Part shown: piece after piece, positions 3,801 through 32,056 of the stretch
Position numbering within the stretch: position 1 is the stretch's first letter
How the letters are laid out: each line of letters opens with the position of its first letter
Origin: Macrostomum lignano
Taxonomy: Eukaryota
Direction: 5' to 3'
Length of the DNA stretch: 64,000 nucleotides
Assembly (NCBI GenBank): GCA_002269645.1
Contig: NIVC01001370.1
Coordinates: 62,001 to 126,000 of the forward strand
Notes under the pieces: generated by a model
Database searches by the model: none
What the model saw: the letters and a program-made list of their open reading frames with translations, nothing else
Told to the model about the DNA's origin: nothing
Translations under genes and position numbers: made by a program

Positions 3801-4671
3801 GGTTTTGGGAGCGGATTCTCATAGGCCTGGGGACAGATTTTCACAGGTTTTAGGAGGCGACGATCTCATGTTTTTTGGAGACGGTTTTTTATGGTTTTTA
3901 TGGCCGTATTTGTGTTGCTTTTTAAGACAATTAACGGCACATAAATTATTTAGGTACAATCCTGGAGATGAGTAAGGGGGTGGTATTGCGTCCGACCCTC
4001 ATTGTTCACGGAAATTATGGTTTGTGGTGCAATTCACGTAAATGAGGGCTAAACCACAAGACAGAGAGGGCTTAACGACAATGTGTGTCCCAGCGTACGT
4101 ATCCGTGTGTGCTCACAGGGAGACAGCGGAATGGGCCTGACTTATTAAGGGCTTTTTCATTCCAGGAAATTCACGGGAACTGAGGCGCTAGCTAGCTAGC
4201 GACACAGCAAGCCAGCTCACGTATTTCTTATCCAAAGCGTCGAAGCAGCCCCGGACCCAGTAGCAGACTTTCTCGCAGCCGGGGCAGGGCGAGTCGTCAC
4301 GGATAATTTTCAGCCGGATGCCCTCCAGGTTGCGCTCAATGAAGCCGGCCTCTGGGAAGATGCCGCGCAGGTACAGCACGTTGGACAGGGCAACGGCGAA
4401 TAGCTTCTTGACAAAGGTGGCCGACTTCTCCGAGCTGCTGACCTCCGGGAACATCTTCAACCACTGGCGGCGGCGTGGATGGAAGGATTTGGCTTGGGTA
4501 GGACTGCGTGCCTACACTAGAGATTGCAACTGGGTAAAGGGCAGACAGAGACAGACGGACAGACAGACAGACAATGACCAGACAGACAGACAGACAATGA
4601 CCAGACAGACAGACAGACAATGACCAGACAGACAGACAGACAATGACCAGACAGACAGACAGACAATGACC

Positions 4672-11800: not shown

Positions 11801-14800
11801 GCTACTGAGGATCTGGAAGAAAGGCCCAGCTACTGAGGATCTGGAAGAAAGGCCCAGCTACTGAGGATCTAGAAGCAAGGCCCAGCTACTGAGGATCTGG
11901 AAGAAAGGCCCAGCTACTGAGGATCTGGAAGAAAGGCCCAGCTACTGAGGATCTGGAAGGAAGGCCCAGCTACTGAGGATCTGGAAGAAAGGCCCAGCTA
12001 CTGAGGATCTGGAAGAAAGGCCCAGCTACTGAGGATCTGGAAGGAAGGCCCAGCTACTGAGGATCTGGAAGAAAGGCCCAGCTACTGAGGATCTGGAAGA
12101 AAGGCCCAGCTACTGAGGATCTGGAAGCAAGGCCCAGCTACTGAGGATCTGGAAGAAAGGCCCAGCTACTGAGGATCTGGAAGGAAGGCCCAGCTACTGA
12201 GGATCTGGAAGAAAGGCCCAGCTACTGAGGATCAGGAAGAAAGGCCCAGCTACTGAGGATCTGGAAGCAAGGCCCAGCTACTGAGGATCTGGAAGAAAGG
12301 CCCAGCTACTGAGGATCTGGAAGGAAGGCCCAGCTACTGAGGATCTGGGAGGTTGGCCCAGCAATTTTGAGGATCTAGGGATCTGGGAGGGTGGCTCAGC
12401 AACTGAGGATCTGAGAGGCTGGCCCAGTAACTGACACTCTGGGAGGCTGGCCCAGTAACTGACACTCTGGGAGGCTGGCCCAGCAACTGAGGATCTGGGA
12501 TGCTGGCCCAGTAACTGACACTCTGGGAGGCTGGCCCAGCAACTGAGGATCTGGGATGCTGGCCCAGTAACTGACACTCTGGGAGGCTGGCCCAGTAACT
12601 GACACTCTGGGAGGGTGGCTCAGCAACTGAGGATCTGAGAGGCTGGCCCAGTAACTGACACTCTGGGAGGCTGGCCCAGTAACTGACACTCTGGGAGGCT
12701 GGCCCAGCAACTGAGGATCTGAGAGGCTGGCCCAGTAACTGACACTCTGGGAGGCTGGCCCAGTAACTGACACTCTGGGAGGGTGGCTCAGCAACTGAGG
12801 ATCTGAGAGGCTGGCCCAGTAACTGACACTCTGGGAGGCTGGCCCAGTAACTGACACTCTGGGAGGCTGGCCCAGCAACTGACACTTTGGGAGGCTGGCC
12901 CAGCAACTGAGGATCTGGAAGAAAGGCCCAGCTACTGAGGATCTGGAAGAAAGGCCCAGCTACTGAGGATCTGGAAGCAAGGCCCAGCTACTGAGGATCT
13001 GGAAGAAAGGCCCAGCTACTGAGGATCTGGAAGAAAGGCCCAGCTACTGAGGATCTGGAAGAAAGGCCCAGCTACTGAGGATCTGGAAGCAAGGCCCAGC
13101 TACTGAGGATCTGGAAGAAAGGCCCAGCTACTGAGGATCTGGGAGGTTGGCCCAGCAATTTTGAGGATCTAGGGATCTGGGAGGGTGGCTCAGCAACTGA
13201 GGATCTGAGAGGCTGGCCCAGTAACTGACACTCTGGGAGGCTGGCCCAGTAACTGACACTCTGGGAGGCTGGCCCAGCAACTGAGGATCTGGGATGCTGG
13301 CCCAGTAACTGACACTCTGGGAGGCTGGCCCAGCAACTGAGGATCTGGGATGCTGGCCCAGTAACTGACACTCTGGGAGGCTGGCCCAGTAACTGACACT
13401 CTGGGAGGGTGGCTCAGCAACTGAGGATCTGAGAGGCTGGCCCAGTAACTGACACTCTGGGAGGCTGGCCCAGTAACTGACACTCTGGGAGGCTGGCCCA
13501 GCAACTGACACTTTGGGAGGCTGGCCCAGCAACTGAGGATCTGGAAGAAAGGCCCAGCTACTGAGGATCTGGAAGAAAGGCCCAGCTACTGAGGATCTGG
13601 AAGCAAGGCCCAGCTACTGAGGATCTGGAAGAAAGGCCCAGCTACTGAGGATCTGGAAGAAAGGCCCAGCTACTGAGGATCTGGAAGAAAGGCCCAGCTA
13701 CTGAGGATCTGGAAGCAAGGCCCAGCTACTGAGGATCTGGAAGAAAGGCCCAGCTACTGAGGATCTGGAAGGAAGGCCCAGCTACTGAGGATCTGGGAGG
13801 TTGGCCCAGCAATTTTGAGGATCTAGGGATCTGGGAGGGTGGCTCAGCAACTGAGGATCTGAGAGGCTGGCCCAGTAACTGACACTCTGGGAGGCTGGCC
13901 CAGTAACTGACACTCTGGGAGGCTGGCCCAGCAACTGAGGATCTGGGATGCTGGCCCAGTAACTGACACTCTGGGAGGCTGGCCCAGCAACTGAGGATCT
14001 GGGATGCTGGCCCAGTAACTGACACTCTGGGAGGCTGGCCCAGTAACTGACACTCTGGGAGGGTGGCTCAGCAACTGAGGATCTGAGAGGCTGGCCCAGT
14101 AACTGACACTCTGGGAGGCTGGCCCAGTAACTGACACTCTGGGAGGCTGGCCCAGCAACTGAGGATCTGAGAGGCTGGCCCAGTAACTGACACTCTGGGA
14201 GGCTGGCCCAGTAACTGACACTCTGGGATGGTGGCTCAGCAACTGAGGATCTGAGAGGCTGGCCCAGTAACTGACACTCTGGGAGGCTGGCCCAGCAACT
14301 GACACTCTGGGAGGGTGGCTCAGCAACTGAGGATCTGAGAGGCTGGCCCAGTAACTGACACTCTGGGAGGCTGGCCCAGCAACTGAGGATCTGAGAGGCT
14401 GGCCCAGTAACTGACACTCTGGGAGGCTGGCCCAGTAACTGACACTCTGGGAGGGTGGCTCAGCAACTGAGGATCTGAGAGGCTGGCCCAGTAACTGACA
14501 CTCTGGGAGGCTGGCCCAGCAACTGACACTTTGGGAGGCTGGCCCAGTAACTGACACTCTGGGAGGCTGGCCCAGCAACTGACACTCTGGGAGGCTGGCC
14601 CAGTAACTGACACTCTGGGAGGCTGGCCCAGTAACTGACACTCTGGGAGGCTGGCCCAGTAACTGACACTCTGGGAGGCTGGCCCAGTAACTGACACTCT
14701 GGGAGGCTGGCCCAGCAACTGACACTTTGGGAGGCTGGCCCAGCAACTGAGGATCTGGATTCGAGCACCAAATTTCAAAACGCGGGAATGTGGTAAGGCA

Positions 14801-16379
14801 ATAAATCAGGTCAAGACATATAGAAGACCCATTTAATAAGTAGAAATATTTACTTGACTTTCAAGCTGATCCTTCGCCTTCTCCAGCTGATGCTCCAGCT
14901 GCTCAATGGTCCGCTTCAGGGCGGCCTCAGCCTGCTCAGACAGTCGTTTCCGCTTCTCCAGCTGGTCGGCATAGGCGGCCGATTGGTCCTGCATCAATTG
15001 CAGTTTCTCGTCCGAACCGTCGCGTTGAGCCCGCACCTCGGCCAGTTCCCACTGCAGTCGCTGTTTCTCGGCCGCCGAGTCGGCCAATTGCTGGCCGAGT
15101 GAGGCGGTCTCAGTCTGCAGTTGAGCCTTAGCCGCAGCGGCCTCTTTTTGTAATTGCTGCTCCTGTTTGCGATGATTTCTGCACAGCCGTTCGTGCTGTT
15201 TGCCTAAGGCTAGGAGCTCTTTGTGCAGGGCTTGAACCTGAATTAAGTAGGTAGAATATTAATTCTCTCATCATTTCGGATTTTTAGTATTTCAACACAT
15301 TTTTATGCACAAAACATTGCGTCAATTAGAGGCGAAATTTTCCAGACATTTTTTGTGGCGCTTAATGCTAGGCTGTTGTTTCTGGCGCCTAATGCTAGGT
15401 TGTTGTTTGTGGCGCCTAATGCTACGCTGTTTGTGGGCGTCTAATCCTACGCTGTTTGTGGCGCCTAATGCTACTCTGTTTGTGGGCGTCTAATCCTACG
15501 CTGTTTGTGGCGCCTAATGTTACTCTGTTTGTGGGCGTCTAATCCTACGCTGTTTGTGGCGCCTAATGCTACTCTGTTTGTGGGCGTCTAATCCTACGCT
15601 GTTTGTGGCGCCTAATGCTACGCTGTTTGTGGCGCCTAATGCTACTCTGTTTGTGGGCGCCTAATGCTACGCTGTTTGTGGCTCCTAATGCTACTCTATT
15701 TGTGGCGCCTAATGCTACTCTGTTTGTGGGCGCCTAATCCTACGCTGTTTGTGGCGCCTAATGCTACGCTGTTTGTGGCGCCTAATGCTACGCTGTTTGT
15801 GGCGCCTAATGCTACTCTGTTTGTGGGCGTCTAATCCTACGCTGTTTGTGGCGCCTAATGCTACTCTGTTTGTGGGCGTCTAATCCTACGCTGTTTGTGG
15901 CGCCTAATGCTACTCTGTTTGTGGGCGTCTAATCCTACGCTATTTGTGGCGCTTACGGCCTAATGCTTTATTTTGTTTTTGAGCCATAGAAATGCTAATT
16001 TTAACGCCCTGTCACAACCAATGTTATAACAAAGTGCTGACGCTGAAGTGAAAGTTTGCCAAGAAGTAAACGCGAGCAAATTCAAGCATCAGTCAGGCTT
16101 AAAACCCACTTGCTCCCCGGAGCTTCGACCGCTGTCAGAAAGGCGTCGGCGAAGGCTTTCCAACTCTTTGGACTGCTCGCCAAGGTCGGAGCGAAGTAGG
16201 GCGCACTCGCGTTCTTTGCTAGCCAGCCTAGTTTGAACAGTTTGCAACTCGCGTTCCCATTCGGCCCGTTTGCTTTGAATCATCTGATCAATGTGATACA
16301 TTAGATTCTGCAATTCCGCTTCGCAAGCGCTCGGCATTAAATCTAGCATTGTGGCTTCCGCCTCTGAGCTTTTGTTCAT
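8832..16379 (-). CDS. CEP63: CEP63/DEUP1-family centriolar coiled-coil protein, about 591 aa
   Basis: Exons 16110-16379, 14854-15237, 11451-11644, 10713-11145 and 8832-9326 are all GT-AG with compatible phases (0,0,2,0) and total 1776 nt. N-terminal SACEAELQNLMYHIDQMI and C-terminal RIDGHVTELKRQTD match the two conserved ends of CEP63/DEUP1 as I recall them (SCEAELQELMKQIDIM; RLDAHIEELKRES). The middle is heptad-rich coiled coil. Confidence 0.88.
9460..10700. repeat. Compound array: about five 128-bp units followed by alternating 21-bp units (42-bp dimer)
   Basis: GGATGAGACT recurs at 9686, 9814 and 9942 (period 128). GGAATGGGTGAGATTGGACAA alternates with GGAATGGGTGGGATTGGAGCA from about 10130 to 10700. 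Lies in the last CEP63 intron. Confidence 0.92.
11664..14758. repeat. 3.1-kb 28-bp minisatellite with two subfamilies and higher-order blocks
   Basis: Units GAGGATCTGGAAGAAAGGCCCAGCTACT and GAGGATCTGGGAGGCTGGCCCAGCAACT / GACACTCTGGGAGGCTGGCCCAGTAACT; fills CEP63 intron 2. Confidence 0.95.
15345..15960. repeat. 24-25-bp minisatellite (GTTTGTGGCGCCTAATGCTACGCT)
   Basis: Period of 24 read from 15601 and 15625; CEP63 intron 1. Confidence 0.93.
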
Positions 16380-16552
16380 GACTAATGGAATAGGGACTTG
16401 AATCGGTTTATAATACTTGGCCTTTGCTGGATGGCGATTCTTAGAAACGGCCGATTAACAAACTGACACGCGAGTGCATGTGGCCTGAAAACATCATTTA
16501 AGAAGTTGTCATTGAAAAAAGTATAACAATTATTCGTTTAAGTAGATCTAAA

Positions 16553-17942: not shown

Positions 17943-20900
17943 CTAGTAAGGACCCGGCCAATGATAGCGAGGCGGCCAATGCCAATAATTTCCCCACGGC
18001 CGATGCCATTGATTATCCGTTGGCTGTTGGCCAAATCGCGAAAAGTGCATGAAATGTTGTTGCCGGGGTCGCCATGGTCCGTATTGCATTGAGGTGTCGA
18101 CCTGCGGCTGAGCTGCTGCTTGCTGCTCTGCGTTGGAAGCTGCTTGTTGATCCTCATTTGAAATTGGTGTCCGACGCAAAGGATTTTTTGAATTTGGCGT
18201 TGAATTTTCTGCTTGTTCCGACTCGGTAGTGGGATTCGAATACTGCGATGAAGATGCTTTTGACTTTGACGGTGAAGGATCCGAGGTTTGTTCGGATGAA
18301 ATCAAAGAAGCCGAATATGCTGCACGTTTTGGAGATGGAGCTTGTTGCGGATTTTGTAATTTTCGTTTTAGGCAACAATTTTCCCTAGTTGACGTACAAC
18401 TGGACTGCGATTGATTCGATGCGGAAGCTGGTGTTGGCCCCGACGCTGAAGCTGGTGTCAGCTTTAACGTGGAAGCTGGTGTCGGCCTCGACGCGGAAGC
18501 TGGTGTCGTCCTCGACGCGGAAGCTGGTGTCGGCCTCGACGCGGAAGCTGGTGTCGTCCTCGACGCGGAAGCTGGTGTCGGCCTCGACGCGGAAGCTGGT
18601 GTCGTCCTCGACGCGGAAGCTGGTGTCGGCTTTAACGTGGAAGCTGGTGTCGTCCTCGACGCGGAAGCTGGTGTCGGCTTTAACGTGGAAGCTGGTGTCG
18701 GCCTCGACGCGGAAGCTGGTGTCGGCTTTAACGTGGAAGCTGGTGTCGGCCTCGACGCGGAAGCTGGTGTCGTCCTCGACGCGGAAGCTGGTGTCGACCT
18801 CGACGCGGAAGCTGACGTCGGCTTCAATGTGGAAGCTGGTGTCGGCCCCGACGCTGAAACTGGTGTCGGCCTCAACGCGGAAGCTGGTGTTGGCCTTGAC
18901 GCTATAGCTGGTGTCGGCCTCGACGCTGAAGCTTGAGTCGGCTTCAGTGTGGAAGCTGGCGTCGGGCTTGATGCTGAAACTGACGTCGGCTTTAATTTGG
19001 AAGCTGGTGTCGGCCTCGACGCGGAAGCTGACGTCGGCTTCAATGTGGAAGCTGGTGTTGGCCTTGACGCTGAAACTGATGTCGGCTTTAATTTGGAAGC
19101 AGGTGTCGGCTTCAGTGTAGAAGCTGGTGTCGGCTTTAATGTGGAAGCTGGTGTCGGCTTCAATGTGGAAGCTGGTGTTGGCCTTGACGCGGAAGCTGGT
19201 GTAGGCTTCAATGTGGAAGCTGGTGTCGGCTTCAATGTGGAAGCTGGTGACGGCTTCAATGTGGAAGCTGGTGTTGGCCTTGACGCGGAAGCTGGTGTAG
19301 GCTTCAATGTGGAAGCTGGTGTTGGCCTTGACGCGGAAGCTGGTGTAGGCTTCAATGTGGAAGCTGGTGTCGGCTTCAATGTGGAAGCTGGTGTCGGCTT
19401 CAATGTGGAAGCTGGTGACGGCTTCAATGTGGAAGCTGGTGTCGGCTTCAATGTGGAAGCTGGTGTTGGCCTTGACGCGGAAGCTGGTGTCGGCTTCAAT
19501 GTGGAAGCTGGTGTCGGCTTCAATGTGGAAGCTGGTGTCGGCTTCAATGTGGAAGCTGGTGTCGGCTTCAATGTGGAAGCTGGTGTTGGCCTTGACGCGG
19601 AAGCTGGTGTTGGTTTCAATGTGGAAGCTGGTGTCGGCTTCAATGTGGGAGCTGGTGCCGGCTTCAATGTGGAATCTAATATTGGCCTTGACGCGGAAGC
19701 TGGTGTAGGCTTCAATTTGGAAGCTGGTGTCGGCGTCGACGCGGAAGCTGGTGTCGGCGTCGACGCGGAAGCTGGTGTCGTCTTCAATATGGAAGCTGGT
19801 GTTGGCCTCGACGCGGAAGCTGGTGTTGGTTTCAATGTGGAAGCTGGTGTTGGTTTCAATGTGGAAGCTGGTGTCGACCTCGACGCGGAAGCAGTAGTCG
19901 AAGAAGCCGGTGTCAGTTTCGACGCGGAAGCAGTAGTTGACGAAGAAGCTGGTGTTGGAACTGTCGGTTTCGGTATGGTAGCAGTAGTCAATGAAGAAGG
20001 TTGCATCGGCTTTGGCACAGAAGCTGATGCCAGCTTAGACAATAAAGAAGTACTCGTAGTTGAAGCGGAAGCTAAATTCATCGACACGAAAGCAGCAGTC
20101 GATGCAGTAGCTTGCGTTGCATTTGACCCAGCAACAGACTTAGACAAAGGAATAGATCTTGGGTCTTGCAAAAGAGCACTCGATTTTAACAATATTAGCT
20201 GACTGGATCTATCAGAATTCGCAGTATCAACAACTTTACCGCTGGCCAGTGCCTTACTGGCACAATTCAAAGCGTTAAGGAACTGCCAAGGAACAGATCT
20301 CGGATCCACAACTGTGTCTAAAAATTAACGGAAGTTTCTGAATTAATTTTCTGCGCGGGCGCGAATCGAATAACGCGGACACTACATTGAACAAAGATGT
20401 AGATCAAAACTTCTCAGGAAGACTTCTCTGACTGCATTTTCAAGTGACACAAGGATTTTCAATAAAACCCAATTACAGAATTTTGTCGAGTATTTTCGAA
20501 TATCTATACGAATTTTCGAGCACATAAAGTCTGCTTTAGCACATACAAGCGATCCCCTGCTGAAAATGATATGTACTTTGTATATACTACTACTACTTTG
20601 TATATTCGTATCTCCTATTTATAATAATCCTACTTGTTTCTATAAAAGTACTCGTATTTCGTGGCGGCCCAATCCTAGCATCTATACGACTATAAATACA
20701 AATGTACTGTCCAGATTTCTTGCTTACAAGGCTAATCTTCTCTACTCAACAGAAGAGTAGGAACTCAGAAACCGGTTCTGGCCTATCGAGAGTTCGAATC
20801 TTTGAATCGAAGAGTTTAGTCACACACAAGCTATATATATGGAAGCGCGTATCTTTCATGCCAGACAGCTTGATATTCCGATTGCTCAACATTTGAATTA

Positions 20901-21785
20901 ATTGAGGGAATCTCCTGACAGTTTGAGACTATCTATCAATATGTTAGTAGTTAAAAAACTAATCAAAGCACAACTCACTGGACAGCAGTTTAACTAAGAC
21001 GCACTGCTCAGTAGGCAGCTTGGAGTACGTGATGTAGGTACAGCCAACGGCTGGGTCCCAATTCCCGCACGACAGACTACAATCCATATCGCCGCTAATC
21101 ACCCATTCGGTGCTAATTCGGAACTTCAATTCGGACGGCAACGATGCACAGATTTGATGGAGGGCAGCAGCTGCGTCTGATCGTGCGGTATAAACTACGT
21201 GAACAGATGGCCTGAAACCATTGCAGATGTACAGCTTTGCTACCTGTCCATAACGACTGGCCAGGTCGCCGTCGCGAAGCAATTCAATTAATTGAGATGG
21301 CAGACTCCTAAACTCGGCATTAATTACTTTAATTGCAATTGCCAGGCTAACTAGAGACAGGTGGCCAGATTTTAATGGCGGCATATTTTTCACAGCTTGC
21401 TCAGCAGTGTTAGCTGACGGAGTAGGCAATGCGCACCCCATGCCTTGATCAATCGCTTTGGCAGTCCTTTTCAGCGTCTCAAGTCTTCGCTGCAAGTCGG
21501 CAAGTAGTGCAGGATTAGCCATGTCCTCTCTGCTTATGGGCCTTCTTTCGGGATCCTTTGCGACCCATTCTTTCAGATCCTGTATGTGTTTTTCAGAGTA
21601 GAAAGCAAACTGATAACTTCTGAATTATCAAGTTACAAAGTGCACCGGCAATGAACTCGAAACCTTACCAATAAGTCCTTCTTTAAAACTGAACTAGATG
21701 TTGAATTTGACACCTTCTCTTGCAGAGTTTGTATTATTTGTGCAAAATTGGCATTTTCATTCATTTTTATAGCCATGCAATTCAT
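17943..21785 (-). CDS. Uncharacterised protein of about 1040 aa: RRM-like N-terminal segment, 8-aa Thr-Pro repeat region, W/H/P/R-rich C-terminus
   Basis: Exons 21669-21785, 20979-21609 and 17943-20317 join by canonical sites: TTG|gtaagg with ttatcag|TTT (phase 0, 59-nt intron), and A|gtgagt with ttttag|AC (phase 1). Total 3123 nt in one frame. The last exon stays open for about 2.4 kb across a 24-nt repeat with synonymous third-position variation. Additional upstream or internal exons cannot be excluded. Confidence 0.65.
18420..19960 (-). repeat. Coding 24-nt tandem repeat (about 64 units; ASTLKPTP / ASASRPTP)
   Basis: Plus-strand unit GTGGAAGCTGGTGTCGGCTTCAAT and variant GCGGAAGCTGGTGTCGGCCTCGAC. 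The frame is preserved throughout and is continuous with unique coding sequence on both sides. Confidence 0.9.
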
Positions 21786-24700
21786 CAAATTTATTGAAGC
21801 TTTATAGGGCACTGAGCATTGAAAGGAGATAATGACAACTGAAAAATAAAAACCCACAAGTATGACTTACTAGAACTCCAACATATTAACAAGGCACCTT
21901 CCTACCAATAAACAAACAAAATTAACAAATAAACAAAATAATTTCATAAGATTTATAAATTTCACTGTCTTGAAAATTGCAACTAATGAGTATAATGATA
22001 ACCATGTGCAACATTTGCAATTGTCCCTTAAAATAAGTTGCTAATGAGAATTTTAAACTGCATTTATAACCATATAGAATAACAAACCTAGATGGACTTT
22101 CTGACAATGCATACTCCAAGGTGCATAATCAGGCATAGCTCATATTGTTTGGAACAGGAGCATATAATAAGTAAAGCAGACTTATAAATTATTTGTTCAT
22201 GTACTTAATGATTTATTATTTATTTTTAATTTACAAAGCAGTTAGAGGTTAATAGCCTATAGGTCCAGGTGAATACCATTAATGCAATAATGGGTGAAGA
22301 TCAAAATATGATTTTAACGTGCACTATAGTTAAAAATGGTCTGGTCTCCCTTACTCAGAATATATGAACATAGCAGGGCTGCACCACTATGTTAAAGTTG
22401 CATATTGAGGGTAGATGACTGATTTTTTATATACAATGCTTCTAAGATCTCAAGTTTGTAATTAGATAGACATTGGTCAATGATTCTAAAGTATTCTTCT
22501 TTAAGTGTATTATTAGAGCAGCTGTTGCATTCCAAAAGATAGGTTTGGATAGCTGGCAGTTGAGCCAGTGCTCCCTAGTTCTGGTGTGTGAGTCTTTTGG
22601 TCTTCCCCACATAGGAGATACTCTAGTCATCAGAATCAATAGATAATACCTGTATGTAGAGCATAGGGCATACATGAAATTAACCAACTAACAAAACTGC
22701 CAACTTTGGAAATAAAAGGATAGCCAAATAAAGGGAGAATGAGGGTTGGTTTACTCTAGTCAATGTGATTAGGTTTGATAAACTTTTGTTGATTCACTCT
22801 TTTAGAAATGAATTTGTGAATGTTGTAGTAGATAAAGACTAAAGGGTAACCATTCTATTGGAGCATTTTGGTTAAGAACTTGATTTTTTAATCAAATTTG
22901 ATCTAGGAATTTCAGATAATAAAGGCTCTATAAAGCAAACATATGATCAGACCAGATTTGCATTGTCTAAAGCACAAATTATAAAAGTTAAAAATGGTTC
23001 AACCTGATTGCATCACCCCTAAGTGAACCAATTCTATTTCTATATATTAGAATATTTTGTAATACTTTGCCTATTAACAGGCATAAGATCATTTTTATCC
23101 AAAAACTTGATTTTTTATTAATAATATTGTATATTAAAATAATAATAATAAAAACATTTTATTCTATGTCGAAAATTCTATGTTGAATATATCATTTTTA
23201 AAGGTAGACAAGATTCAATCTTAATCTTGATCATCAAGATCTTGGCACTTTTTTAAATTTCAATCTCAGTTTCAAGATCTCAAAAAAGTTAAGATTTGAG
23301 ACTGTGTGACTGTTGGTAACTATACTATTATCATATTTATATGATATACATCAAGTTACTAACAAGCTCAATATTATATAATAATTGCTTTCTTTTTATT
23401 ATCATCACTGTACATATTTAACAAACAAAAATATTAGCATTGAAGATAGAATTGTGTCAATAGGCCTATTAGATTCTATTTAGGCTTAATTTCAAATCTC
23501 AATTAAATCTTGATTATCTTAAAAAAGTATAGATTTCCCAAGCTGAAATTCATCCCTAAAAAAATATATTTGGCACCAAAAGTTAAAAAATTAAATGCAT
23601 GCAAACAAACCTTTATTAAAAATATAAAATATTGTGCTATACTAAAGTCTTGAGAAAGCTTTTATAAATTAACAATCAAATATTATCATTGCTAGATATA
23701 ATTCCAACAATATACGGAATCTTCTGGCAAAAAAAGTTATTGTTCTGCATGCACTTAGGCCTAAAGTTCACTGAAAGTAGCAATACTGGTCAATTTTTTG
23801 TTTTGTGCACTTGATGTATGAAGTATACCCTAGTAGATCTCAAGTCTAAAATATTTTGAAAATGTGATATCATCCAACCCCAATTCCAATTGGAATATAT
23901 AAAAAACTTGCAGACACACATGGGATCTAAAATTATAGCTCAAAAACATGACAAAACACAGAACATGTTAACTTTTATACCAAATATATGTATAGTACTA
24001 ATTAGATGATGAGACATTTAGCCTTAACAAGATAGTCATAGTTATTCCTGCCATTTATCCAAAACTACTGTCTTGACTCTAGCTATAACACACTATTGGA
24101 TAATTCCAAAATTGCAACAGATGGTTGGATGCCTTTTGTCCACTTATTCCAATAGGGCATTCCATAGGTGTAAGAATAGGGGGACAGTGGGGCCATGGCC
24201 CTCCACTTTTTAAAATGGGAGGCCAGTAATGGTATCTGGCCCCTCCAAATTTTAAATGTAAAATATAGACTTTTTGCTTCTTTTTTTACTCTTATTTTTG
24301 GTTTTTGCTGCTTTGCATAAACATATATGCATGGTATATATTAATATAAAATAAAAAAATTGGAAACTTGTAAATATATAGGTTACAATTTTGATTTTTG
24401 ATTTCTAAGAAATCATTCAAAGAAACATCTACCATAGACCATACCATTACCATGATCCATAAAGCATGAATCATGATTTTGATTCATTCATTCTTATTCA
24501 TATTCATGAATAAAAATTAAGAATGAACTAAATGAACATTACATTGAGTCATTAAGCAGTGACAATAAGAATAAACTGACTAACAATGAGACATATAATA
24601 TTATATTTAATATAGCTATCTATTATATTTTTACAATGGTTTGTTTTTTGTTTTTTATTAAAAAGTTAAAAACAGTTTTGTTATATGTGGCATATAGCCA

Positions 24701-25250
24701 GGAAAATTAATAGTATTTTAAATGCTCCTAATTGATTTGGAGATAGTTAGTTAGCAATGGTAGTTTTAGGAGGAAAGGGCTAAGCTGGCTGAAGCTCCTT
24801 AGGCCTTAGCCTTTCCAATTATAATTTGATTTGAGATTGCAATATATTTATTTATCATATAAGATATAATGATCCAAGTATCAATTTCTTTATTATATCA
24901 ATGATTATAATATAGTGGATAGATTACTAGGAATGTAATAATTTTAAATTTGCTAATTTGCTATATAGTTTGCTTATCTCATCTTGTTCTTGTGGCCTTA
25001 TACAAAACAAAAAAGTTGCTTACTTAAGTTACTAATATTATTAACATTGCAGCAGCCAGCAATCAACAACAATGAGAAAGATCAATATAGATATACAAAA
25101 CTTTTTGGAAAGTCAAAATCCAATTCAAATGAACTATAAGCACCTATATCCTTGACCCTATGTGTTAATATGCCTGCTGAACCTCTAGGTGCTAATGCAC
25201 TTATATTACCTACTGAAGCTGAACCTCTATGTGCTAATATGCCTGCATTC

Positions 25251-25652
25251 TAGAGGTCGGACGAGCAGAAAATTTTGGTCAGACATGAAATTTTGTGAAA
25301 TTTTCAAAGTCGGGCGTGATCGTGATTGTGAATTTATATTTGCATACACGTATTTTGAGCTCGTAAGTTACAAGTATTGAAAATAACAAAACAAGAAAAT
25401 AAATATTTATAAGTTGATAATAGCTACTCGGTAATGCTGTCAAGTCAACAAATTTAAAATTTATTACTCTTTTACACATTTGTATTCACATATTTTGGTA
25501 AACCAAGTAGAAAAGTTATACTTCTAATAAAAATGTAATAAAGCGGAAATTCACGACTGTTGTGAACAGGTTTCAAGGAAATCACGATTGTGAAAAAAAT
25601 GGTCGTGAATTCACAAAATCGTGATCACGATCGTGATCACGTCCGACCCCTA
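25251..25652. mobile_element. hAT-type MITE (402 bp) nested in the decayed hAT element
   Basis: TIR TAGAGGTCGGACG / CGTCCGACCCCTA; exact 8-bp target-site duplication CTGCATTC at 25243-25250 and 25653-25660. Confidence 0.88.
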
Positions 25653-26051
25653 CTGCATTCTTTGCTGAACCCCCAGGTCTTGTTATGCCTACTAAACTGC
25701 AAGAGCAAGGGCAACCAACTGAACAGTAAACAACTACTATAGGTGCTTTTTCTACTGCTACTGAAATGCTTTCAGAGGATTTAGGTAAGGAAGATTAGAA
25801 ATTAGGGATTTATTATTCTTCTTAGCCGTCATTTTTTGGTTATAATGTGGACTATTTTAGTATATAACTGTGGTACTCCATTTTTTCTCATTTATCAGGT
25901 TCAGTTGCATCTCACCCTGGCTTGTCCTGCTCCTTTTTATGCTATACATTGGATGGGTCACACCAGCCACATGACATGGACACTGAAAAAATGGCTTATC
26001 TTCAAGGTGGCCACTTGTACAGTCAACATAAAGTGGTAAAGTCAGTATAGC

Positions 26052-27510
26052 TGGCTAAGTGTATATATGGCAACTGGAAAAGTGTTCTATAACATTTGCA
26101 GATGACAGGAGCAGCACAAAATTAACCATGAGTAAGAGCAAAGACCCCGTCTTTATACAAGATAGGTTCAACAACTGGAAAAAGGCCAGAGTCTTTCAAC
26201 AAGCATGAGTCTTTTCTCTACCACCAAGAAGCATGCTTTAAGCTGCTCAATGAAGGGAAAGAGACAATTAACTCATAGCTAGCCAGTCAATCTACTGCTA
26301 AATACGCATGTAGGAGGAAGTGTCTTAAGAAAGAAATGGAGTGCATTGTATTTTTACTACACCAGAATTTTCTTGTCTAAAGCAAAGAAGAAAGTGAAAG
26401 AAACCTTAACCAACTGCTCATCCTGAAAAAAGGGTTATCCTAGACCTTGGCATCTGGAATGAATAATTGTCTCTTATGATCCAAAATGAGTTGATCCAAA
26501 AAATTGGCATAACAATATTCCAACAACTTCTCAACATCAGAGAAGCAAAGTTTAATGCCATCCTAGCAGATAAGACAACTGATGTTACCCCTAAAGAGCA
26601 GTTAAACTTGTCCATTTGTTAGGTAAATGAGCAATTGAACATCAATGAAGATCTAGTGGAATTAATCTAAGTGGTAAATACCATAGGAAAGGTCTAGCAG
26701 CTAGATTAAAGGATGCCCTAGTCCACATGCAACTCCCTTTACAATATTGCTATGACTAAGCATATGATGATACAGTAAACATGTCACGGAAAATGAAAGG
26801 GGTGGCAGCCAGAATCTAGAAAGAGTACCCAGCTGCTATCCATATGCACTGCCTAGTGCACTATGCCAATTTTGTCCTACAAGAAGTATCTTGGCAGCAA
26901 AAAATTGTGAGAGATACCTTGGACCTCACAAATAAGATCACTTCTTTTTGTAGACTGTCTACTATGGAAGAAAGATTGAGGCTTCAAAAGAGCCCATTGC
27001 TTCTATATATTTAGCAAGCAACAAAGACCCAAGGGTCTCATACATGTATACAAAGAAAAAGGGGCAAAGGAAAAAGGAAGGAACAAAAAAGCAAGCACTG
27101 GGTGATACATTGAGACAAAGAACATTCCTATCCTACTTCTTCTTAACCCCTCTCACATAACACAACTACACTGTATGTCATCACACTTTTGTAAGAAACT
27201 TTCTAAAAATATCAAATATCTTCTAAATCCAAAGCATGGCACTTGAGATCCCAGGAACACATGGAACATCACTATGCCCTTTGTGCCTTACACAATGGAC
27301 TTGCTGCACTGCTTCATTGAAAAGCCTAATTTGCAACTACTTAGCAGTGATGGACACCATAGAAAAAGTCAATATATCTTTTAGTGATAAAACTCTAAGA
27401 GAGCTACTAGAATGCTAGTGCTTATGGAGAAGTTTAGCTTTGTGTTTAGGCTTTATCTATCTCTGGCTATTTTCTTTATGGCTAAAGAGCTTTTCCATGC
27501 CTTGAATTTT
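26052..27510 (+). pseudogene. hAT transposase pseudogene (ZMYM1-like, TTF zinc finger / DUF4371 type)
   Basis: Fragments in family order, broken by stops and frameshifts: WL..GKVFYNIC, FNNWKKA, IQNELIQ, AILADKTTDVTPKEQL, AYDDTVNMSRKMKGVAARI, HMHCLVH, LCPLCLTQWT. They correspond to the hAT motifs GF-x-NWKKA, DETTD..EQL, YDGASNMSG, HC-x-x-H and LCPTRW. Confidence 0.85.
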
Positions 27511-28721
27511 CATAAACCTTCCCCAAGTCCCTAGACTTGCATTCCTAGTCTCTATATTACTATTGCATGAAACATTTTTGCCAATTGAAGAAAGTCAGAC
27601 TATAGAAAAGGTATAAAAAATAATATCAGTTGGTTTATATAATGCATAGCAGTATAAAAGAATATTTAAATTTGAAAATTTAGTTTCTAAATCTAATGCA
27701 TAAACACAAAATATACTAGTTTGGTTTTTTGGCTCTTCCTTTTCCATTTCTGCCTTAACTTATTTTTTTTCATTGTTATAACTCAGTACAAATGCAAATA
27801 TAATTGGTACACTTAGTAAGGTTTTTTTAACAAAATGCTCATATTAAAAAACATTTGTTTTTTGGATAAAAGTCTATAAAAAGAATTTTTTTTCAAATTT
27901 TTGCATAGACAATAATAAAAAAAAATTAATATGACAAGCAATGTCGTTCCAAAAAATTTCGCAATGAAATTTTTGGGATAATTGGATTCCCTAGTCCTAT
28001 GCCAAAAGATGGCCCTTGGCTACCCTACTTTTTCAAATGTTCTTATGCCTATAAGGAATTCAACCCTAATCATTTGTAACTTTTTTATCATTTACCTATT
28101 CATAAAAAAGTCTAATATAATATGACTAAAATAGCCAAAACCTTTACAACAAATTTTAAGTGTTTAAACCTAATAAGGCAAAAAAACAAAGGTCAAAGAA
28201 CAAAAAATATTTTTTTATCATTTTTTTGCAAAAAACTTTACCTCTCATTCTTCTTTTGAATTATTAAATAATTTAGCATACTAAACAAAGTTGAGTCCCT
28301 GACCAGAGTCAATAAGCCAAACCAATTAAAAAATATATTTTTTCTAATTTTTTAAGTATAAAATATTTAAGTATTTGAAATAAAAGGTTAGTTATATAGA
28401 TTATGACTATGACTATGTCATGAATTGAAAAATGGCAGCTATTATTGTTATAGTAACCATATAAATAGTGAGACAGTTATTTTTGGTTACTACTTACAAT
28501 AAATACTATCTAAATGAAATAATGAACCTGGGCTACAATGCAACTAAGGACAAAGTAAAAGTGAATAAATTTAAAAAATAAAGAAACATGTTATTAATAA
28601 ATATATTCATACAATAGTGGTAACTTCCAAATAGTTCTTGTTATAGTAGCATATTTTAGGTAATTGTTAAGTTAACTATTAGTATTACATTGTAATTTAA
28701 CTGAATTTTTTTCCATATGAC

Positions 28722-29210
28722 CCAGGATGGAATTATTGTATTTCTTAAGTCAAACAGAATCATGTGATTTTTTATGGCGCGCAAAATATTTTTTATTGGT
28801 CACATTTTTTTTGGTACTTAGCACGTCGCAAAATAACGAAATAACGAAATAACAAAAGACAATAACGAAAAATGCATTCTAAGAAAATGTGGTGATTTGA
28901 ATTTTTGTCCAAATACGTATGTTAGAGAATGTTACGAGATTCTACTTTTTATAGAATTTTTTTCGAATTTTTACTTTTGTACCTTATTTAGTTTTTATTT
29001 TTTATTTTTTATTCTTTTTTTTGTGAGCTTAGCTAGTAGGATTATCTTTTGCAAAATCCAATATATCAAGCGCACTTTTGCATATATTAAGAATTAGAAA
29101 TTTTGTCTGAAATTCTGCGACACATTTTTCTGGATTTTTTGACGCAAAATCACATTTTTTCGCTCAATTGCATAACACGTTATGATTTTTCTGCAAGAAT
29201 TCCATCTAGG
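28722..29210. mobile_element. MITE (489 bp) with 8-bp target-site duplication
   Basis: TIR CCAGGATGGAATTATTGTA versus CCTAGATGGAATTCTTGCA (4 mismatches); CATATGAC at 28714-28721 and 29211-29218. Confidence 0.72.
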
Positions 29211-29306
29211 CATATGACCATAAAAATAACCATTTTGCTTCCTACCTATAGTGACAAAAAAAATAACAGTTTTGCTTTTCATACAGTTATCAGTTAGGGC
29301 CTACAG

Positions 29307-29704
29307 TAGAGGTCGGACGGGATCCCGATCCCAATCCCGAAATCTCGGGATCCCAAGGAAAATTGAATTCCTGCGGGACCAGACTCCCAACCCTAAAAAA
29401 CTCGAGATTCGGGAACAGGTCTTTTGATTAAAAATTTATAGAATTAGTGATTACTTGAAGGTATTTTGCTTTAACTTGTACTCATTACATTATTTACTTT
29501 GTTGGGCCTGGTTACAAAACTTCATATCAATTTCGTTGTGTTTTACTTCTTGATCTTTACAATCTTTTCTCAATTTTGTTTAACTTTACATGGACAATAC
29601 ACTAAAAGACCTGATCCCGATTCCCAATCCCGATCCCGATCCCGAGAAAAAAATTATTCCCGATCCTGATCCCGCCCAAAGATTTCAATCCCGTCCAACC
29701 TCTA
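29307..29704. mobile_element. hAT-type MITE (398 bp) with ATCCCG subterminal repeats
   Basis: TIR TAGAGGTCGGACGGGA / TCCCGTCCAACCTCTA (1 mismatch); exact 8-bp duplication GCCTACAG at 29299-29306 and 29705-29712. Confidence 0.88.
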
Positions 29705-30592
29705 GCCTACAGTAAGTAAAGACCCTAGGCCTAGATAGTGTCTTATGTGACAACCATAGAAATAACCATTTTGTTATTTATATGGTCACTGTAACAATAA
29801 CAACTGCCTTGAAAAATAGTTAATTATATTGGCTTAGTATTTTTTAATATAGATTATAGAGACTTTTATGCTAGAACTTAGGACATTAGACCTAATAATA
29901 GTTTTTAAACTATATCTTTTTGCAACTATAGCCTAAAGGCTAAAGGAACTTAGAATATTAGAGCAACAAAAACAATATAGGGCCTAGCCAACAAGTATTA
30001 TGTGACAATGAGAAAATGTTAGCAATTTTTTTATACAAATCAATTTAATCTGGGCGTTGGCTAATTGCTAATTTATTTTACACTGGCTTATGACTATGTC
30101 ATGTAATGATTGTAGTCATGATAGCCATAGCCATACCATAGGCACTATAGTATTATACCAGAGCGTTATGGACATACTAACATACAAACATTAGAGATTT
30201 AGTATATTTGGATTAGTTAATTTTTTCATTAGTTTAACTATTTAATCGAAATTTATATGTTTACTAATACTAACAGTCTGTGACAGTCTAAATACGTTAG
30301 AAAATTTCATTGGCGAGTCTACAGAATTCTGAAGACATAATCGATGTGTTGATGCGATCACGATTATCCGCTACGCGACCGCGATCTCGATCATACATCT
30401 TGTAAAATCATGCCGTGATCTAAAACATTTAAACTTGTAATAGTAAATCAAAACTTATCAGTTTTTTTACTGATGTCTACTAAAAATCAAGATTTTTACT
30501 TTTTCAACGTTTTAAGCTTTTAAAAAAATAAAATTCATTACATAGGTTCTTACTGTGCTAATTCCAGAGTAAGAGCACTTCCCTTAACGAGC

Positions 30593-30842
30593 GGGTGTTG
30601 CTATTTCGCGGCCAAGCCCGGCGGTCTTGTTACTTTGGTTTTTAACTTAATTTAAAAAATAGAGCATCAGAAGTTCATTAAATTAACAATCAATATTTTA
30701 CAATGTAGTAAACTCACAATTGACTCTAAAAATATGTGGCATTCTGGTCAGTATATTTTGTTTTACTTATTTACTAAAATAGATTTACATTGGCTAAATA
30801 GGGGCCGCCCGGGCCGGGCCGGGCCGCGAAATAGCAACACCC
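30593..30842. mobile_element. Mutator-like MITE (250 bp)
   Basis: Perfect 21-bp TIR GGGTGTTGCTATTTCGCGGCC; exact 9-bp duplication TTAACGAGC at 30584-30592 and 30843-30851. A 9-bp TSD with G-initial TIRs is the Mutator signature. Confidence 0.85.
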
Positions 30843-31897
30843 TTAACGAGCTGCCCTGAATCACAGTGCAAAAATGTTTCTAAAGGAACTTTTTTAAAAA
30901 TGCTTTCATGAAATATTTAAACAAAAAAGAAACGCAATGTGTGGGATGTAACATTAATTACATTTAACATTAATTTTACGTGCAATTTTTATTGCGCGTT
31001 GCATGCTTGGCAAAAATTTTACATGTATATTTCATTGTATGTTGCATATTTATGCCAAATGTGCAATAGCAGGTAACGGTACAGAAACTGAATGTCACGT
31101 TGTGATAGAATGAGTAGCGAAAGTTATGAAATCCTTTCATAAGATTTTACGCCGTGTGAAGGACTCATCAGACTGAATGATAAATTTACCGAATTACCGA
31201 AAAAATGCGTGTTAAAGGCGCGTTGTTTACGCGCTTAAATGCAAACGAAAACGCACATTTTATGCGCATTATACGCGAGTATCTGTTGGTTGCGAAGGGT
31301 CAGAATATAGCCTCTACACTAGAGCAACTGCAGTATTTCGACTTTTGACTTAAATTAGACACTTAAGAGCTGTAAAAACTCTGAGTGTATCATATCCCAG
31401 CTTCATTCTGCATATACAATTATGCATATGTTTCATATTCACTTAAAATGATAATTCAGTTAAATTTAACTGTGTATTTTTACGGTCTACTATATTACAT
31501 GTGTACTTTAGTCCGTAATTGTACTAAAGCAGACGAGAAATTTTGCGAGGCTAGGACAGATAAGATTCCTTAAGCAGTTTTTCTTATTTCAATATTCACT
31601 GCAGACCCCACATCTCGAAAGTGATTTCGCACAAGAAGATAAGCGAATTAGCACGATATTCGTCTGCGCCTCCAAGATGAAAATCTAGAAACGCTCACAG
31701 CAAATCTTGCTCGCTTCCTACCCTCACTCCGCGATCCACAGTCTACAATTAAATACAAAGTGACCTACGGACGGAGGTCTTAAATGAATTCGTCAACCCG
31801 CAGAAAAAAAGCTAGCCTTAGATAACTTCATTTCACTTTTCTCTCAAGCGCTCTCTCTGACACAGCAAGTTGCTACTAATTTTTGTGCGTTTCTCGG

Positions 31898-31995
31898 CCA
31901 GACAGACAAACAGACACTAAGACAGACACTAAGACAGACACTAAGACAGACAGACAGACAGATAGACGGACAGACAGATAGACAGACAGACACTG

Positions 31996-32056
<61 letters not shown>
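31898..32056. repeat. (GACA)n microsatellite
   Basis: Direct reading. Confidence 0.95.

What the first reader, a model, noticed from the sequence alone, without database searches (positions are those of the whole stretch)
17943..21785. Orphan gene: NOT4-like RRM joined to about 60 Thr-Pro repeats, a bipartite NLS-like motif and an aromatic tail
Seen: a clean three-exon model of about 1040 aa. Exon 2 contains LPSQLIELLRDGDLASRYGQVAKLYICNGFRPSVHVVYTARSDAAAALHQI, followed by a C-x3-C..C-TY cysteine cluster. By eye this parallels the CNOT4/Not4 RRM and adjoining CCCH region (roughly EVLKRPEYFGKFGKIHKVVIN..SAYVTYIRSEDALRAIQ, then C..C.YLH), but no RING finger is visible. Exon 3 has about 64 octapeptides (ASTLKPTP/ASASRPTP) with synonymous variation, then LKRKLQNPQQAPSPKR (bipartite NLS-like, with an SP-K-R CDK-type site), and ends in PWRPRQQHFMHFSRF..QWHRPWGNYWHWPPRYHWPGPY. 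Inference: a nuclear RNA-binding protein with a CTD-like multisite proline-directed phosphorylation tract and a condensate-forming tail. I do not recognise this architecture from any named family.
Basis: partly seen in the sequence, partly recalled or inferred. Interest (0 to 1): 0.72.

Follow-up and report, generated by a model that had tools for sequence, protein, structure and literature searches.

The report
Truncated SCAF4/8 gene copy with repeats
The "orphan" gene is real and transcribed, but it is not an orphan and not NOT4-like: it is a flatworm-specific, heavily diverged partial copy of the RNA polymerase II-associated factor SCAF4/SCAF8 that has lost its polymerase-binding domain and has had a 24-bp minisatellite expand inside its last exon.

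Summary
The window is Macrostomum lignano DNA, and 46% of it is tandem arrays. The minus-strand three-exon ORF exists. GenBank's RNA-seq-derived model (PAA46851.1, Mlig023038g3) supports exon 1 and the 20979/20317 junction. It places the first acceptor at 21579, not 21609, which gives 1030 aa. Exon 2 has no NOT4 features (no RING, no CCCH). It is homologous to the RRM plus post-RRM extension of M. lignano's own SCAF4/SCAF8 orthologue (Mlig024026, CID+RRM): exhaustive phmmer E 1e-5, and 26.9 bits against an HMM built from 58 non-Macrostomum SCAF4/8 regions. The pre-RRM segment is also colinear with the parent. Both introns match the parent's last two introns in phase and, within 0-2 codons, in position. 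No CID exon lies in the 42 kb held upstream. The RNP1, RNP2 and other near-invariant family residues are replaced. The 61-unit octapeptide array (ASTLKPTP/ASASRPTP, 53 TP) is a coding minisatellite; evidence for constraint within it is weak. The 546 non-repeat codons carry no stop (P about 4e-17), which argues for a maintained protein. Function, localisation and phosphorylation remain untested. Verdict: a new variant of a known kind, of moderate interest.

The parts
21669..21785 (-). Exon 1 (39 codons, ATG at 21785; donor GT at 21668-21667). Corresponds to the end of the parent gene's third-from-last coding exon.
   Evidence: Translation. Matches database models P0001/P0002. Smith-Waterman alignment of aa 5-82 to P0004 235-309 scores 61, z=6, 0/1000 shuffles.
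20979..21579 (-). Exon 2 (601 nt, 200 codons plus 1 base). It holds the retained pre-RRM helix (MANPALLADLQRRLETLKRTAKA) and the RRM-derived domain.
   Evidence: P0001/P0002 read DLL|DLKEWV. Phase-0 intron aligned to the parent's QLQ|SLQ intron and phase-1 intron KLLS|N aligned to the parent's ELLQ|G intron.
21001..21405 (-). Degenerate SCAF4/8-type RRM plus post-RRM extension ('domain 2'), exon-2 residues 59-192. RNP2 TLWxG has become AIAIK, RNP1 RGCAF has become RPSVH, and AWAP has become EWVI. YG, WD and G-TY-I-Y are kept.
   Evidence: phmmer E 1.1e-5 over 1.84 billion proteins. BLASTP 30% identity, E 4e-12. tblastn E 5e-10. HMM of non-Macrostomum SCAF4/8 regions 26.9 bits, single-sequence E 1.3e-10. 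Alignment. AF2 with the SCAF alignment pLDDT 85. Foldseek top hits are the Seb1 and Nrd1 RNA-binding domains.
19893..20317 (-). Exon 3, pre-array part. The first ~17 residues (VVDPRSVPWQFLNAL) are still colinear with the start of the parent's last exon; an S/T/A-rich low-complexity linker follows.
   Evidence: Position-constrained score 26, P=0.00085; an unconstrained local alignment is not significant. There are 3 non-synonymous and 0 synonymous differences from the second copy.
18420..19892 (-). Coding minisatellite: 61 units of 24 bp encoding ASTLKPTP / ASASRPTP (P+S+T+A = 79% of residues; 53 TP).
   Evidence: TRF; unit tables; composition.
17943..18416 (-). Non-repeat C-terminal tail (157 aa plus TAG stop at 17943-17945). 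Includes the NLS-like LKRKLQNPQQAPSPKR (about 18324-18371) and the W/H/R/P/Y-rich last 45 residues (17946-18080).
   Evidence: Translation. No Pfam hit. Not significantly similar to the parent's last exon (z=1). Stop-free by chance P=2e-5.

Best explanation
The locus is an expressed, protein-coding, lineage-specific paralogue of the M. lignano SCAF4/SCAF8 gene (a CID-RRM factor of the Nrd1/Seb1 family). A DNA-level partial duplication kept only the 3' part of the parent: the end of one exon, the RRM exon and the last exon. The copy has no CID in the DNA held. It lost about 215 residues inside the RRM exon, and it replaced most family-invariant residues, including both RNP motifs. Its Pro/Ser/Thr-rich last exon was invaded or expanded by a 24-bp minisatellite that now encodes 61 TP-containing octads.

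Shown: the homology, the shared intron positions and phases, the absence of a CID exon in the window, the loss of conserved residues, the array anatomy, the maintained ORF, and the transcript-based annotation.

Inferred, at roughly one chance in three: the product is a nuclear, largely disordered protein. Its RRM-plus-extension module survives as a folded scaffold, more likely a protein-binding or low-affinity RNA-binding module than a canonical RNA reader. Without a CID it cannot couple phospho-CTD to nascent RNA as its parent does. The TP array would act as a long flexible spacer, possibly phospho-regulated, ending in an Arg/aromatic sticky tail.
For: Identity of organism and gene. The GenBank models derive from RNA-seq assemblies (PMC5730564). 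The parent has Pfam CID plus RRM_1, and its best hits are named SCAF4/SCAF8.

Homology of exon 2. N-terminal colinearity: z=6; in a 124-protein SCAF set the N-terminus hits only the M. lignano copies. Intron 1 is phase 0 and intron 2 phase 1, at equivalent positions in both genes. Colinearity just after intron 2: P=0.00085.

The copy groups with the M. lignano parent in 494/500 NJ bootstraps, with four shared derived residues. It keeps 16 of 45 family-conserved columns, against 31 of 45 for the parent. No CID exon is detectable in the window by tblastn. ORF maintenance: P about 4e-17. Synonymous array variants are commoner than non-synonymous ones only in the coding frame. SCAF4/8 function: PMC6579486. 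The Seb1 RRM plus interwoven domain 2 is conserved in Scaf4/8 (PMC5382271).
Against: The sequence alone is not recognised as an RRM by Pfam or PDB sequence searches, and single-sequence AF2 is unconfident (pLDDT 39). The confident model is driven by the SCAF alignment, so it is not independent evidence of folding. The NJ grouping could be inflated by long-branch attraction.

The tail and most of exon 3 show no significant similarity to the parent. Distinct array variants are near the random synonymous/non-synonymous ratio. The pre-array linker has 3 non-synonymous and 0 synonymous differences between copies, so much of the protein may be unconstrained.

No tissue or expression-level data were found. 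An upstream CID exon beyond the window edge (more than 42 kb away) cannot be formally excluded, although the annotated models start at exon 1.
Confidence: 0.8

Rival explanations
1. One reading: an orphan nuclear RNA-binding protein with a CNOT4/Not4-type RRM and adjoining CCCH finger.
For: Exon 2 does descend from an RRM, and the secondary-structure pattern is RRM-like.
Against: There is no RING and no C-x8-C-x5-C-x3-H pattern. No NOT4 or CNOT4 entry appears among the sequence or fold hits listed. The specific relative is SCAF4/8, with shared introns. The cysteines lie at positions that are not Cys in the homologous family, apart from the third, which is shared with the M. lignano parent.
Confidence: 0.02
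2. A transcribed but functionless, decaying duplicate. On this view the RRM is dead, the array is a neutral minisatellite like the many others in this region, and the ORF is open only because the unit is a multiple of three.
For: 46% of the window is tandem arrays. More than one other frame is also open through the array. 29 of 45 family-conserved positions and both RNP motifs are lost. Array variants are near the random synonymous/non-synonymous ratio. The linker has 3 non-synonymous and 0 synonymous differences between copies.
Against: 546 non-repeat codons carry no stop despite about 70% amino-acid divergence from the parent (P about 4e-17). Splice signals are intact and used in transcript-derived models. 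The 157-codon tail stays in frame after 1.5 kb of array. Non-synonymous array variants are rarer per variant than synonymous ones. Exon 2 has 1 synonymous and 0 non-synonymous differences between copies.
Confidence: 0.15
3. A secreted mucin-like or adhesive protein. The Pro/Thr/Ser-rich tandem array would be an O-glycosylated PTS domain, as in mucins or flatworm adhesive proteins.
For: P+S+T+A make up 79% of the array, and it is encoded by a minisatellite, as are mucin PTS domains. M. lignano is known for repeat-rich secreted adhesive proteins (PMC6410801, listed; not read).
Against: The N-terminus (MNCMAIKMNENANFAQIIQ...) has no hydrophobic signal-peptide-like stretch, and no other exons were found upstream. 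The ancestry is from a nuclear Pol II-associated factor. No Cys-rich secreted-protein domains are present.
Confidence: 0.02
4. The accessory ORF of a transposon.
For: The region is highly repetitive. There is a possible decayed GIY-YIG-like ORF about 700 bp upstream at 22392-22687, recognised by eye only.
Against: No transposase, RT or integrase domain is found in or next to the gene. The neighbours are ordinary host genes (CEP63-like and HORMA). The gene has host-gene introns inherited from SCAF4/8. Only two near-identical copies are seen, as expected from the known genome duplication.
Confidence: 0.01

Closest known systems
SCAF4 / SCAF8 (metazoan CID-RRM anti-terminators); yeast Nrd1 and Seb1
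   Same: Homologous RRM plus the family-specific flanking extension (WD..G.TYIPY). A homologous pre-RRM helix. The two 3' introns are shared with the M. lignano orthologue. The overall order is RRM followed by a long Pro/Ser/Thr-rich disordered C-terminus.
   Different: No CID, which is the family's defining Pol II CTD-binding domain. About 215 residues are deleted within the RRM exon. The RNP1 and RNP2 motifs and 29 of 45 conserved columns are replaced. A 61-unit octad array and an aromatic/Arg tail replace the parent's poly-Pro and RGG-like tail.
CNOT4 / Not4
   Same: Both contain an RRM-fold domain.
   Different: No RING, no CCCH finger and no specific sequence or fold match. The similarity seen by eye is generic RRM periodicity.
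RNA polymerase II CTD and Spt5 C-terminal repeats (short tandem S/T-P repeats phosphorylated by CDKs)
   Same: Dozens of short tandem units, each with one T-P. The units begin TPA and end with a basic residue, loosely like the fission-yeast Spt5 nonamer (from my own knowledge, not tested).
   Different: No homology. No Tyr, so the array is unlikely to be read by CID domains. The phosphorylation is entirely hypothetical.
Mucin-type PTS domains encoded by coding minisatellites
   Same: Composition, minisatellite mode of growth, and local higher-order unit patterns.
   Different: No signal peptide, and the ancestry is from a nuclear protein.

Membership tests
SCAF4/SCAF8 - Nrd1 - Seb1 (CID-RRM factors) | N-terminal CID (CTD-interacting domain, PF04818) | tested here: not met
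   Pfam finds none in the 1030-aa product. tblastn with parent residues 1-230 finds nothing in the 64-kb window. The annotated models start at exon 1.
SCAF4/SCAF8 - Nrd1 - Seb1 (CID-RRM factors) | RRM homologous to the family RRM | tested here: met
   phmmer E 1e-5 database-wide. Family HMM built without Macrostomum sequences: 26.9 bits. BLASTP E 4e-12. NJ sister to the M. lignano orthologue, 494/500.
SCAF4/SCAF8 - Nrd1 - Seb1 (CID-RRM factors) | Conserved regions flanking the RRM that form 'domain 2' (PMC5382271) | tested here: met
   The alignment runs through LP.LK..LS.VS upstream and W.....WD..G.TYI.Y.KLP downstream. Foldseek's top hits are the Seb1 and Nrd1 RNA-binding domains over 122-136 alignment columns (the model was driven by the family alignment).
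SCAF4/SCAF8 - Nrd1 - Seb1 (CID-RRM factors) | Intact RNP1/RNP2 RNA-contact residues on the beta-sheet | tested here: not met
   TLW.G is AIAIK and RGCAF is RPSVH; near-invariant G, C, T and P residues are replaced. The Seb1 mutations F445A and R472E on this sheet abolish RNA binding, but I did not map those residues onto this sequence.
SCAF4/SCAF8 - Nrd1 - Seb1 (CID-RRM factors) | Gene structure shared with the species' orthologue | tested here: met
   Both introns coincide in phase (0 and 1) and in position (within 2 and 0-1 codons) with the last two introns of Mlig024026.
CNOT4 / Not4 | N-terminal C4C4 RING finger | tested here: not met
   There is no Pfam hit and no Cys cluster in exon 1 or the start of exon 2.
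CNOT4 / Not4 | CCCH zinc finger after the RRM | tested here: not met
   The sequence is C-x3-C-x8-C with no His after it. These positions are not Cys in the homologous SCAF family, apart from the third, which is shared with the M. lignano parent.
CNOT4 / Not4 | Specific sequence similarity of the RRM | tested here: not met
   There are no RRM or CNOT4 hits for exon 2 in the PDB at E<=10. No NOT4 entry is among the 60 best profile hits or the 50 best fold hits. A direct alignment to a CNOT4 sequence was not run.
CTD-like / Spt5-CTR-like phospho-repeat | Repeat threonines phosphorylated by proline-directed kinases | not testable with these tools
   Only the presence of 53 TP dipeptides in the array is shown.

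The most novel reading that the evidence does not exclude
A CID-less SCAF4/8 paralogue has acquired its own CTD/Spt5-CTR-like array of about 60 TP octads. It would act as a lineage-specific decoy or platform for transcription-coupled proline-directed kinases and their readers, modulating termination or alternative polyadenylation, perhaps in a particular tissue such as the germline.
Probability: 0.06. Interest if true: 0.75.

Novelty: new variant of a known kind. Interest (0 to 1): 0.35.

Why it matters
This is a clean, traceable case of how an apparent orphan gene arises. It involved partial duplication of a conserved Pol II-associated factor, loss of its defining domain, rapid divergence of the RRM, and growth of a coding minisatellite in a genome where tandem repeats reach 15% overall and 46% in this window. 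If the product is functional, it would be a natural separation-of-function variant of a CID-RRM factor: the RRM module without CTD binding. M. lignano has transgenesis and RNAi, so this is testable. It is also a caution for annotation.

Tried and rejected
- Pfam on the N-terminal 376 aa and on the tail gave nothing meaningful.
- PDB sequence search with exon 2 returned only a chance PTPRF hit, E 0.7.
- Single-sequence AlphaFold was uninformative (pLDDT 39).
- The word-indexed search with a 157-aa fragment of the parent returned nothing and wasted one search.
- The bacterial repeat protein P0003 (E 1e-13) is rejected as homologous. A single unit scores only 23.5 bits with 12/39 identity, so the E-value is the sum of 18 near-identical weak matches.
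- My own by-eye match of QTLQEKV to the parent's QSLQEKI was dropped. The Smith-Waterman alignment places exon 1 differently and puts the two introns in register.
- Tail against the parent's last exon is not significant (z=1).
- The unconstrained local alignment of the exon-3 start is not significant (z=0.3). Only the position-constrained test is.
- The comparison between the two copies has too few substitutions to give dN/dS.
- The gene identifiers were not found in the main text of the paper library or in the supplements of four M. lignano papers; a fifth paper had no supplement held as text.
- No canonical AATAAA lies close to the stop codon.
- The GIY-YIG-like ORF at 22392-22687 has no Pfam support.
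Full report
**What is in the sequence**

The window is eukaryotic DNA unusually rich in minisatellites. TRF lists more than 25 arrays with periods of 22 to 238 bp, and together they cover 46% of the 64 kb.

The array at 18423-19892 has a 24-bp period, 61.2 copies, 81% matches and no indels. In the coding frame it reads as 61 octads of two types, ASTLKPTP (33) and ASASRPTP (27), as classed in a 60-unit register. It holds 53 TP dipeptides, and P+S+T+A make up 79% of its residues.

**Organism, annotation and the corrected splice site**

The N-terminal 376 residues find only two database proteins, both from the flatworm Macrostomum lignano. These are PAA46851.1 'hypothetical protein BOX15_Mlig023038g3, partial' and UniRef A0A1I8JFL1.

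The GenBank contig carrying the first (locus L001) is 99.2% identical to window 31746..20649 and ends inside the array, which is why that model is partial. Transcription and both junctions therefore have indirect transcript support.

Both models read ...KKDLL|DLKEWV.... The first acceptor is therefore at 21579, not 21609.

**Is the ORF more than chance?**

An open frame across the array proves nothing. The plus strand carries ORFs of 155-417 aa across the array, and a second minus-strand frame also reads it without a stop. The evidence lies outside the array: 546 non-repeat codons carry no stop. At the stop-triplet frequency of the flanking non-coding DNA (0.067) this has P about 4e-17, and the 157-codon tail downstream of the array alone gives 2e-5.

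Within the array, distinct variants split 15 synonymous to 23 non-synonymous, near the random expectation of about 30% synonymous. Synonymous variants occupy more copies (57 cells against 37), a bias absent in the other two frames. That is weak evidence of coding constraint, and the cells are not independent events.

**What exon 2 really is**

Pfam finds no domain, and a PDB sequence search finds no RRM. An exhaustive phmmer search of exon 2 against 1.84 billion representative proteins found four hits:
- The gene's own two models.
- A bacterial repeat protein. I reject it because one unit scores only 23.5 bits, so its E-value is the sum of 18 weak repeats.
- P0004, at E 1.1e-5.

P0004 is M. 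lignano PAA64095.1 (Mlig024026g2, 866 aa). It carries Pfam CID (residues 6-131) and RRM_1 (545-608). Its best database relatives are uniformly named SR-related and CTD-associated factor 4 or 8, and its RRM region matches the Seb1 and Nrd1 RNA-binding domains in the PDB. It is therefore the species' SCAF4/SCAF8 orthologue.

Exon-2 residues 66-193 align with P0004 530-646 at 30% identity (E 4e-12). A profile HMM built from the RRM-plus-extension region of 58 SCAF4/8 proteins, none from Macrostomum, hits exon-2 residues 59-192 with 26.9 bits (single-sequence E 1.3e-10).

The alignment covers the canonical RRM and also the flanking segments (LP.LK..LS.VS upstream; W.....WD..G.TYIPY.KLP downstream). 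In Seb1 these segments fold into a second domain interwoven with the RRM, and they are conserved in Nrd1, Scaf4 and Scaf8 (PMC5382271). It has no following His, and the family has no Cys at those positions apart from the third, which is shared with the M. lignano parent. It is not a CCCH finger.

With the SCAF alignment, AlphaFold gives pLDDT 85, and Foldseek's best hits are the Seb1 and Nrd1 RNA-binding domains. This model is driven by the family alignment and is not independent evidence that the sequence folds. The single-sequence model was unconfident.

**Colinearity and shared introns**

The similarity is not confined to the RRM.

- **Pre-RRM segment.** Residues 5-82 align with P0004 235-309 (MANPALLADLQRRLETLKRTAKA against MIDPEILAQLQVLLKELTKTARA). 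The Smith-Waterman score is 61, z=6, reached by 0 of 1000 shuffles. In a set of 124 SCAF proteins the N-terminus hits only the M. lignano copies.
- **Parent gene structure.** Mapping P0004 onto its own locus (L002) gives coding exons covering residues 11-131, 130-269, 269-653 and 651-866.
- **Intron 2.** The parent's last intron is phase 1 within ELLQ|G (G|GC). This gene's intron 2 is phase 1 within KLLS|N (A|AC), at the same place relative to the conserved LL.
- **Intron 1.** The parent's preceding intron is phase 0 at QLQ|SLQ. In the alignment it falls exactly opposite this gene's phase-0 intron 1 (DLL|DLK), allowing a two-codon indel before the next anchor.
- **After intron 2.** The first residues after intron 2 still match at a fixed position (VVDPRSVPWQFLNAL against FIDQDSVPIELIDLL; position-constrained P=0.00085). 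An unconstrained alignment is not significant.

This pattern indicates a DNA-level partial duplication of the 3' part of the SCAF4/8 gene, not a retrocopy and not a de novo gene.

No CID-coding sequence is detectable anywhere in the window by tblastn. About 215 parental residues (310-524) are missing from exon 2.

In a neighbour-joining analysis the domain pairs with the M. lignano parent in 494 of 500 bootstraps, with four shared derived residues. The duplication is therefore lineage-specific, with a caveat for long-branch attraction.

**State of the domain**

Of 45 columns at least 80% conserved among non-Macrostomum SCAF4/8 proteins, the parent keeps 31 and this copy keeps 16. RNP2 (TLW.G) reads AIAIK. 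RNP1 (RGCAF) reads RPSVH. AWAP reads EWVI.

Seb1 mutations on the canonical sheet abolish RNA binding and are lethal. I did not map those residues onto this sequence. Canonical RNA recognition is therefore doubtful, while the hydrophobic core pattern and the domain-2 motifs persist.

**The rest of the protein**

The linker, the array and the 157-aa tail have no significant relatives. The NLS-like motif is a loose match to bipartite consensus. SPKR fits the S/T-P-x-K/R pattern but could occur by chance. The last 50 residues are rich in P, Q, W, R, H and Y.

Between the window and the second copy (L001) the differences are as follows:
- Exon 2: one synonymous difference.
- Pre-array linker: three non-synonymous differences.
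- Intron 2: 16.6 substitutions per kb.

These are too few for a selection test.

**Surroundings**

The gene is not inside a recognisable transposon. Just downstream on the same strand lie a CEP63-domain exon (16092-16454, E 1e-16) and further coiled-coil ORFs. A HORMA-domain exon follows at 4191-4511 (E 2e-17).

**How it most likely works**

SCAF4/8 bind Ser2/Ser5-phosphorylated CTD through the CID and nascent RNA through the RRM, and they suppress early polyadenylation sites (PMC6579486). This copy cannot read the CTD and has probably lost canonical RNA contacts.

My best guess, at roughly one in three, is a nuclear, mostly disordered protein. Its surviving RRM/domain-2 module would serve as an interaction scaffold. 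The TP array would be a flexible, possibly phospho-regulated spacer ending in a sticky Arg/aromatic tail.

The main rival is a transcribed duplicate drifting towards loss (0.15). The maintained 546-codon non-repeat frame argues against it.

**Novelty**

The gene is annotated only as a partial hypothetical protein. Its relationship to SCAF4/8 and its complete structure are not in the names the databases returned. I found no mention of it in the paper library or in the supplements searched.

It fails the family's defining test (no CID), so I file it as a new variant derived from a known kind. It is not a member, and not a new kind.

Noticed in passing
window 16092-16454 (-), with further ORFs at 14836-15258, 11450-11731 and 8835-9659 (-): A CEP63-domain exon (Pfam E 1e-16) and coiled-coil ORFs indicate a CEP63/Deup1-like gene immediately downstream on the same strand. 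Its presumed introns are packed with 24-71-bp minisatellites.
   Followed up: partly
window 4191-4511 (-): An exon encoding the start of a HORMA domain (Pfam E 2e-17), probably from a HORMAD/Mad2-type gene.
   Followed up: partly
whole window; for example 33132-42630: 46% of the window is tandem arrays, three times the 15% reported genome-wide. They include a ~9.5-kb satellite with a 238-bp unit and 68/71-bp sub-periods.
   Followed up: no
window 1235-2154 and 11743-14758: The same 28-bp unit (GGGAGGCTGGCCCAGCAACTGAGGATCT, in rotated register) forms two separate arrays 10 kb apart. This looks like a dispersed minisatellite family.
   Followed up: no
window 20318-20978 (intron 2), compared with L001: Intron 2 differs between the two near-identical copies by 16.6 substitutions per kb plus a 59-bp indel and smaller indels. 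Exon 2 differs by 1.7 per kb and the 10 kb upstream by 2.5 per kb. The reason is unexplained.
   Followed up: partly
window 22000-32000: A 10-kb AT-rich block (29-36% GC) upstream of the gene, with no long ORFs, sits between GC-richer repeat-filled flanks. It is conserved at about 99% in the second copy.
   Followed up: no
window 22392-22687 (-): Two short overlapping ORFs (…HTRTREHW… / …LEALYIKNQSSTLNMQL) looked to me like a decayed GIY-YIG nuclease module of a Penelope-like element. Pfam gave no hit, so this remains unconfirmed.
   Followed up: partly
exon 2 residues 92-105 (window about 21265-21306): SLPSQLIELLRDGD in helix 1 of the RRM resembles SVPIELIDLLRDPD, which in the parent lies after the RRM in the last exon (9/14 identical; E 0.036 in the pairwise comparison). 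This may be chance or a small internal rearrangement.
   Followed up: no
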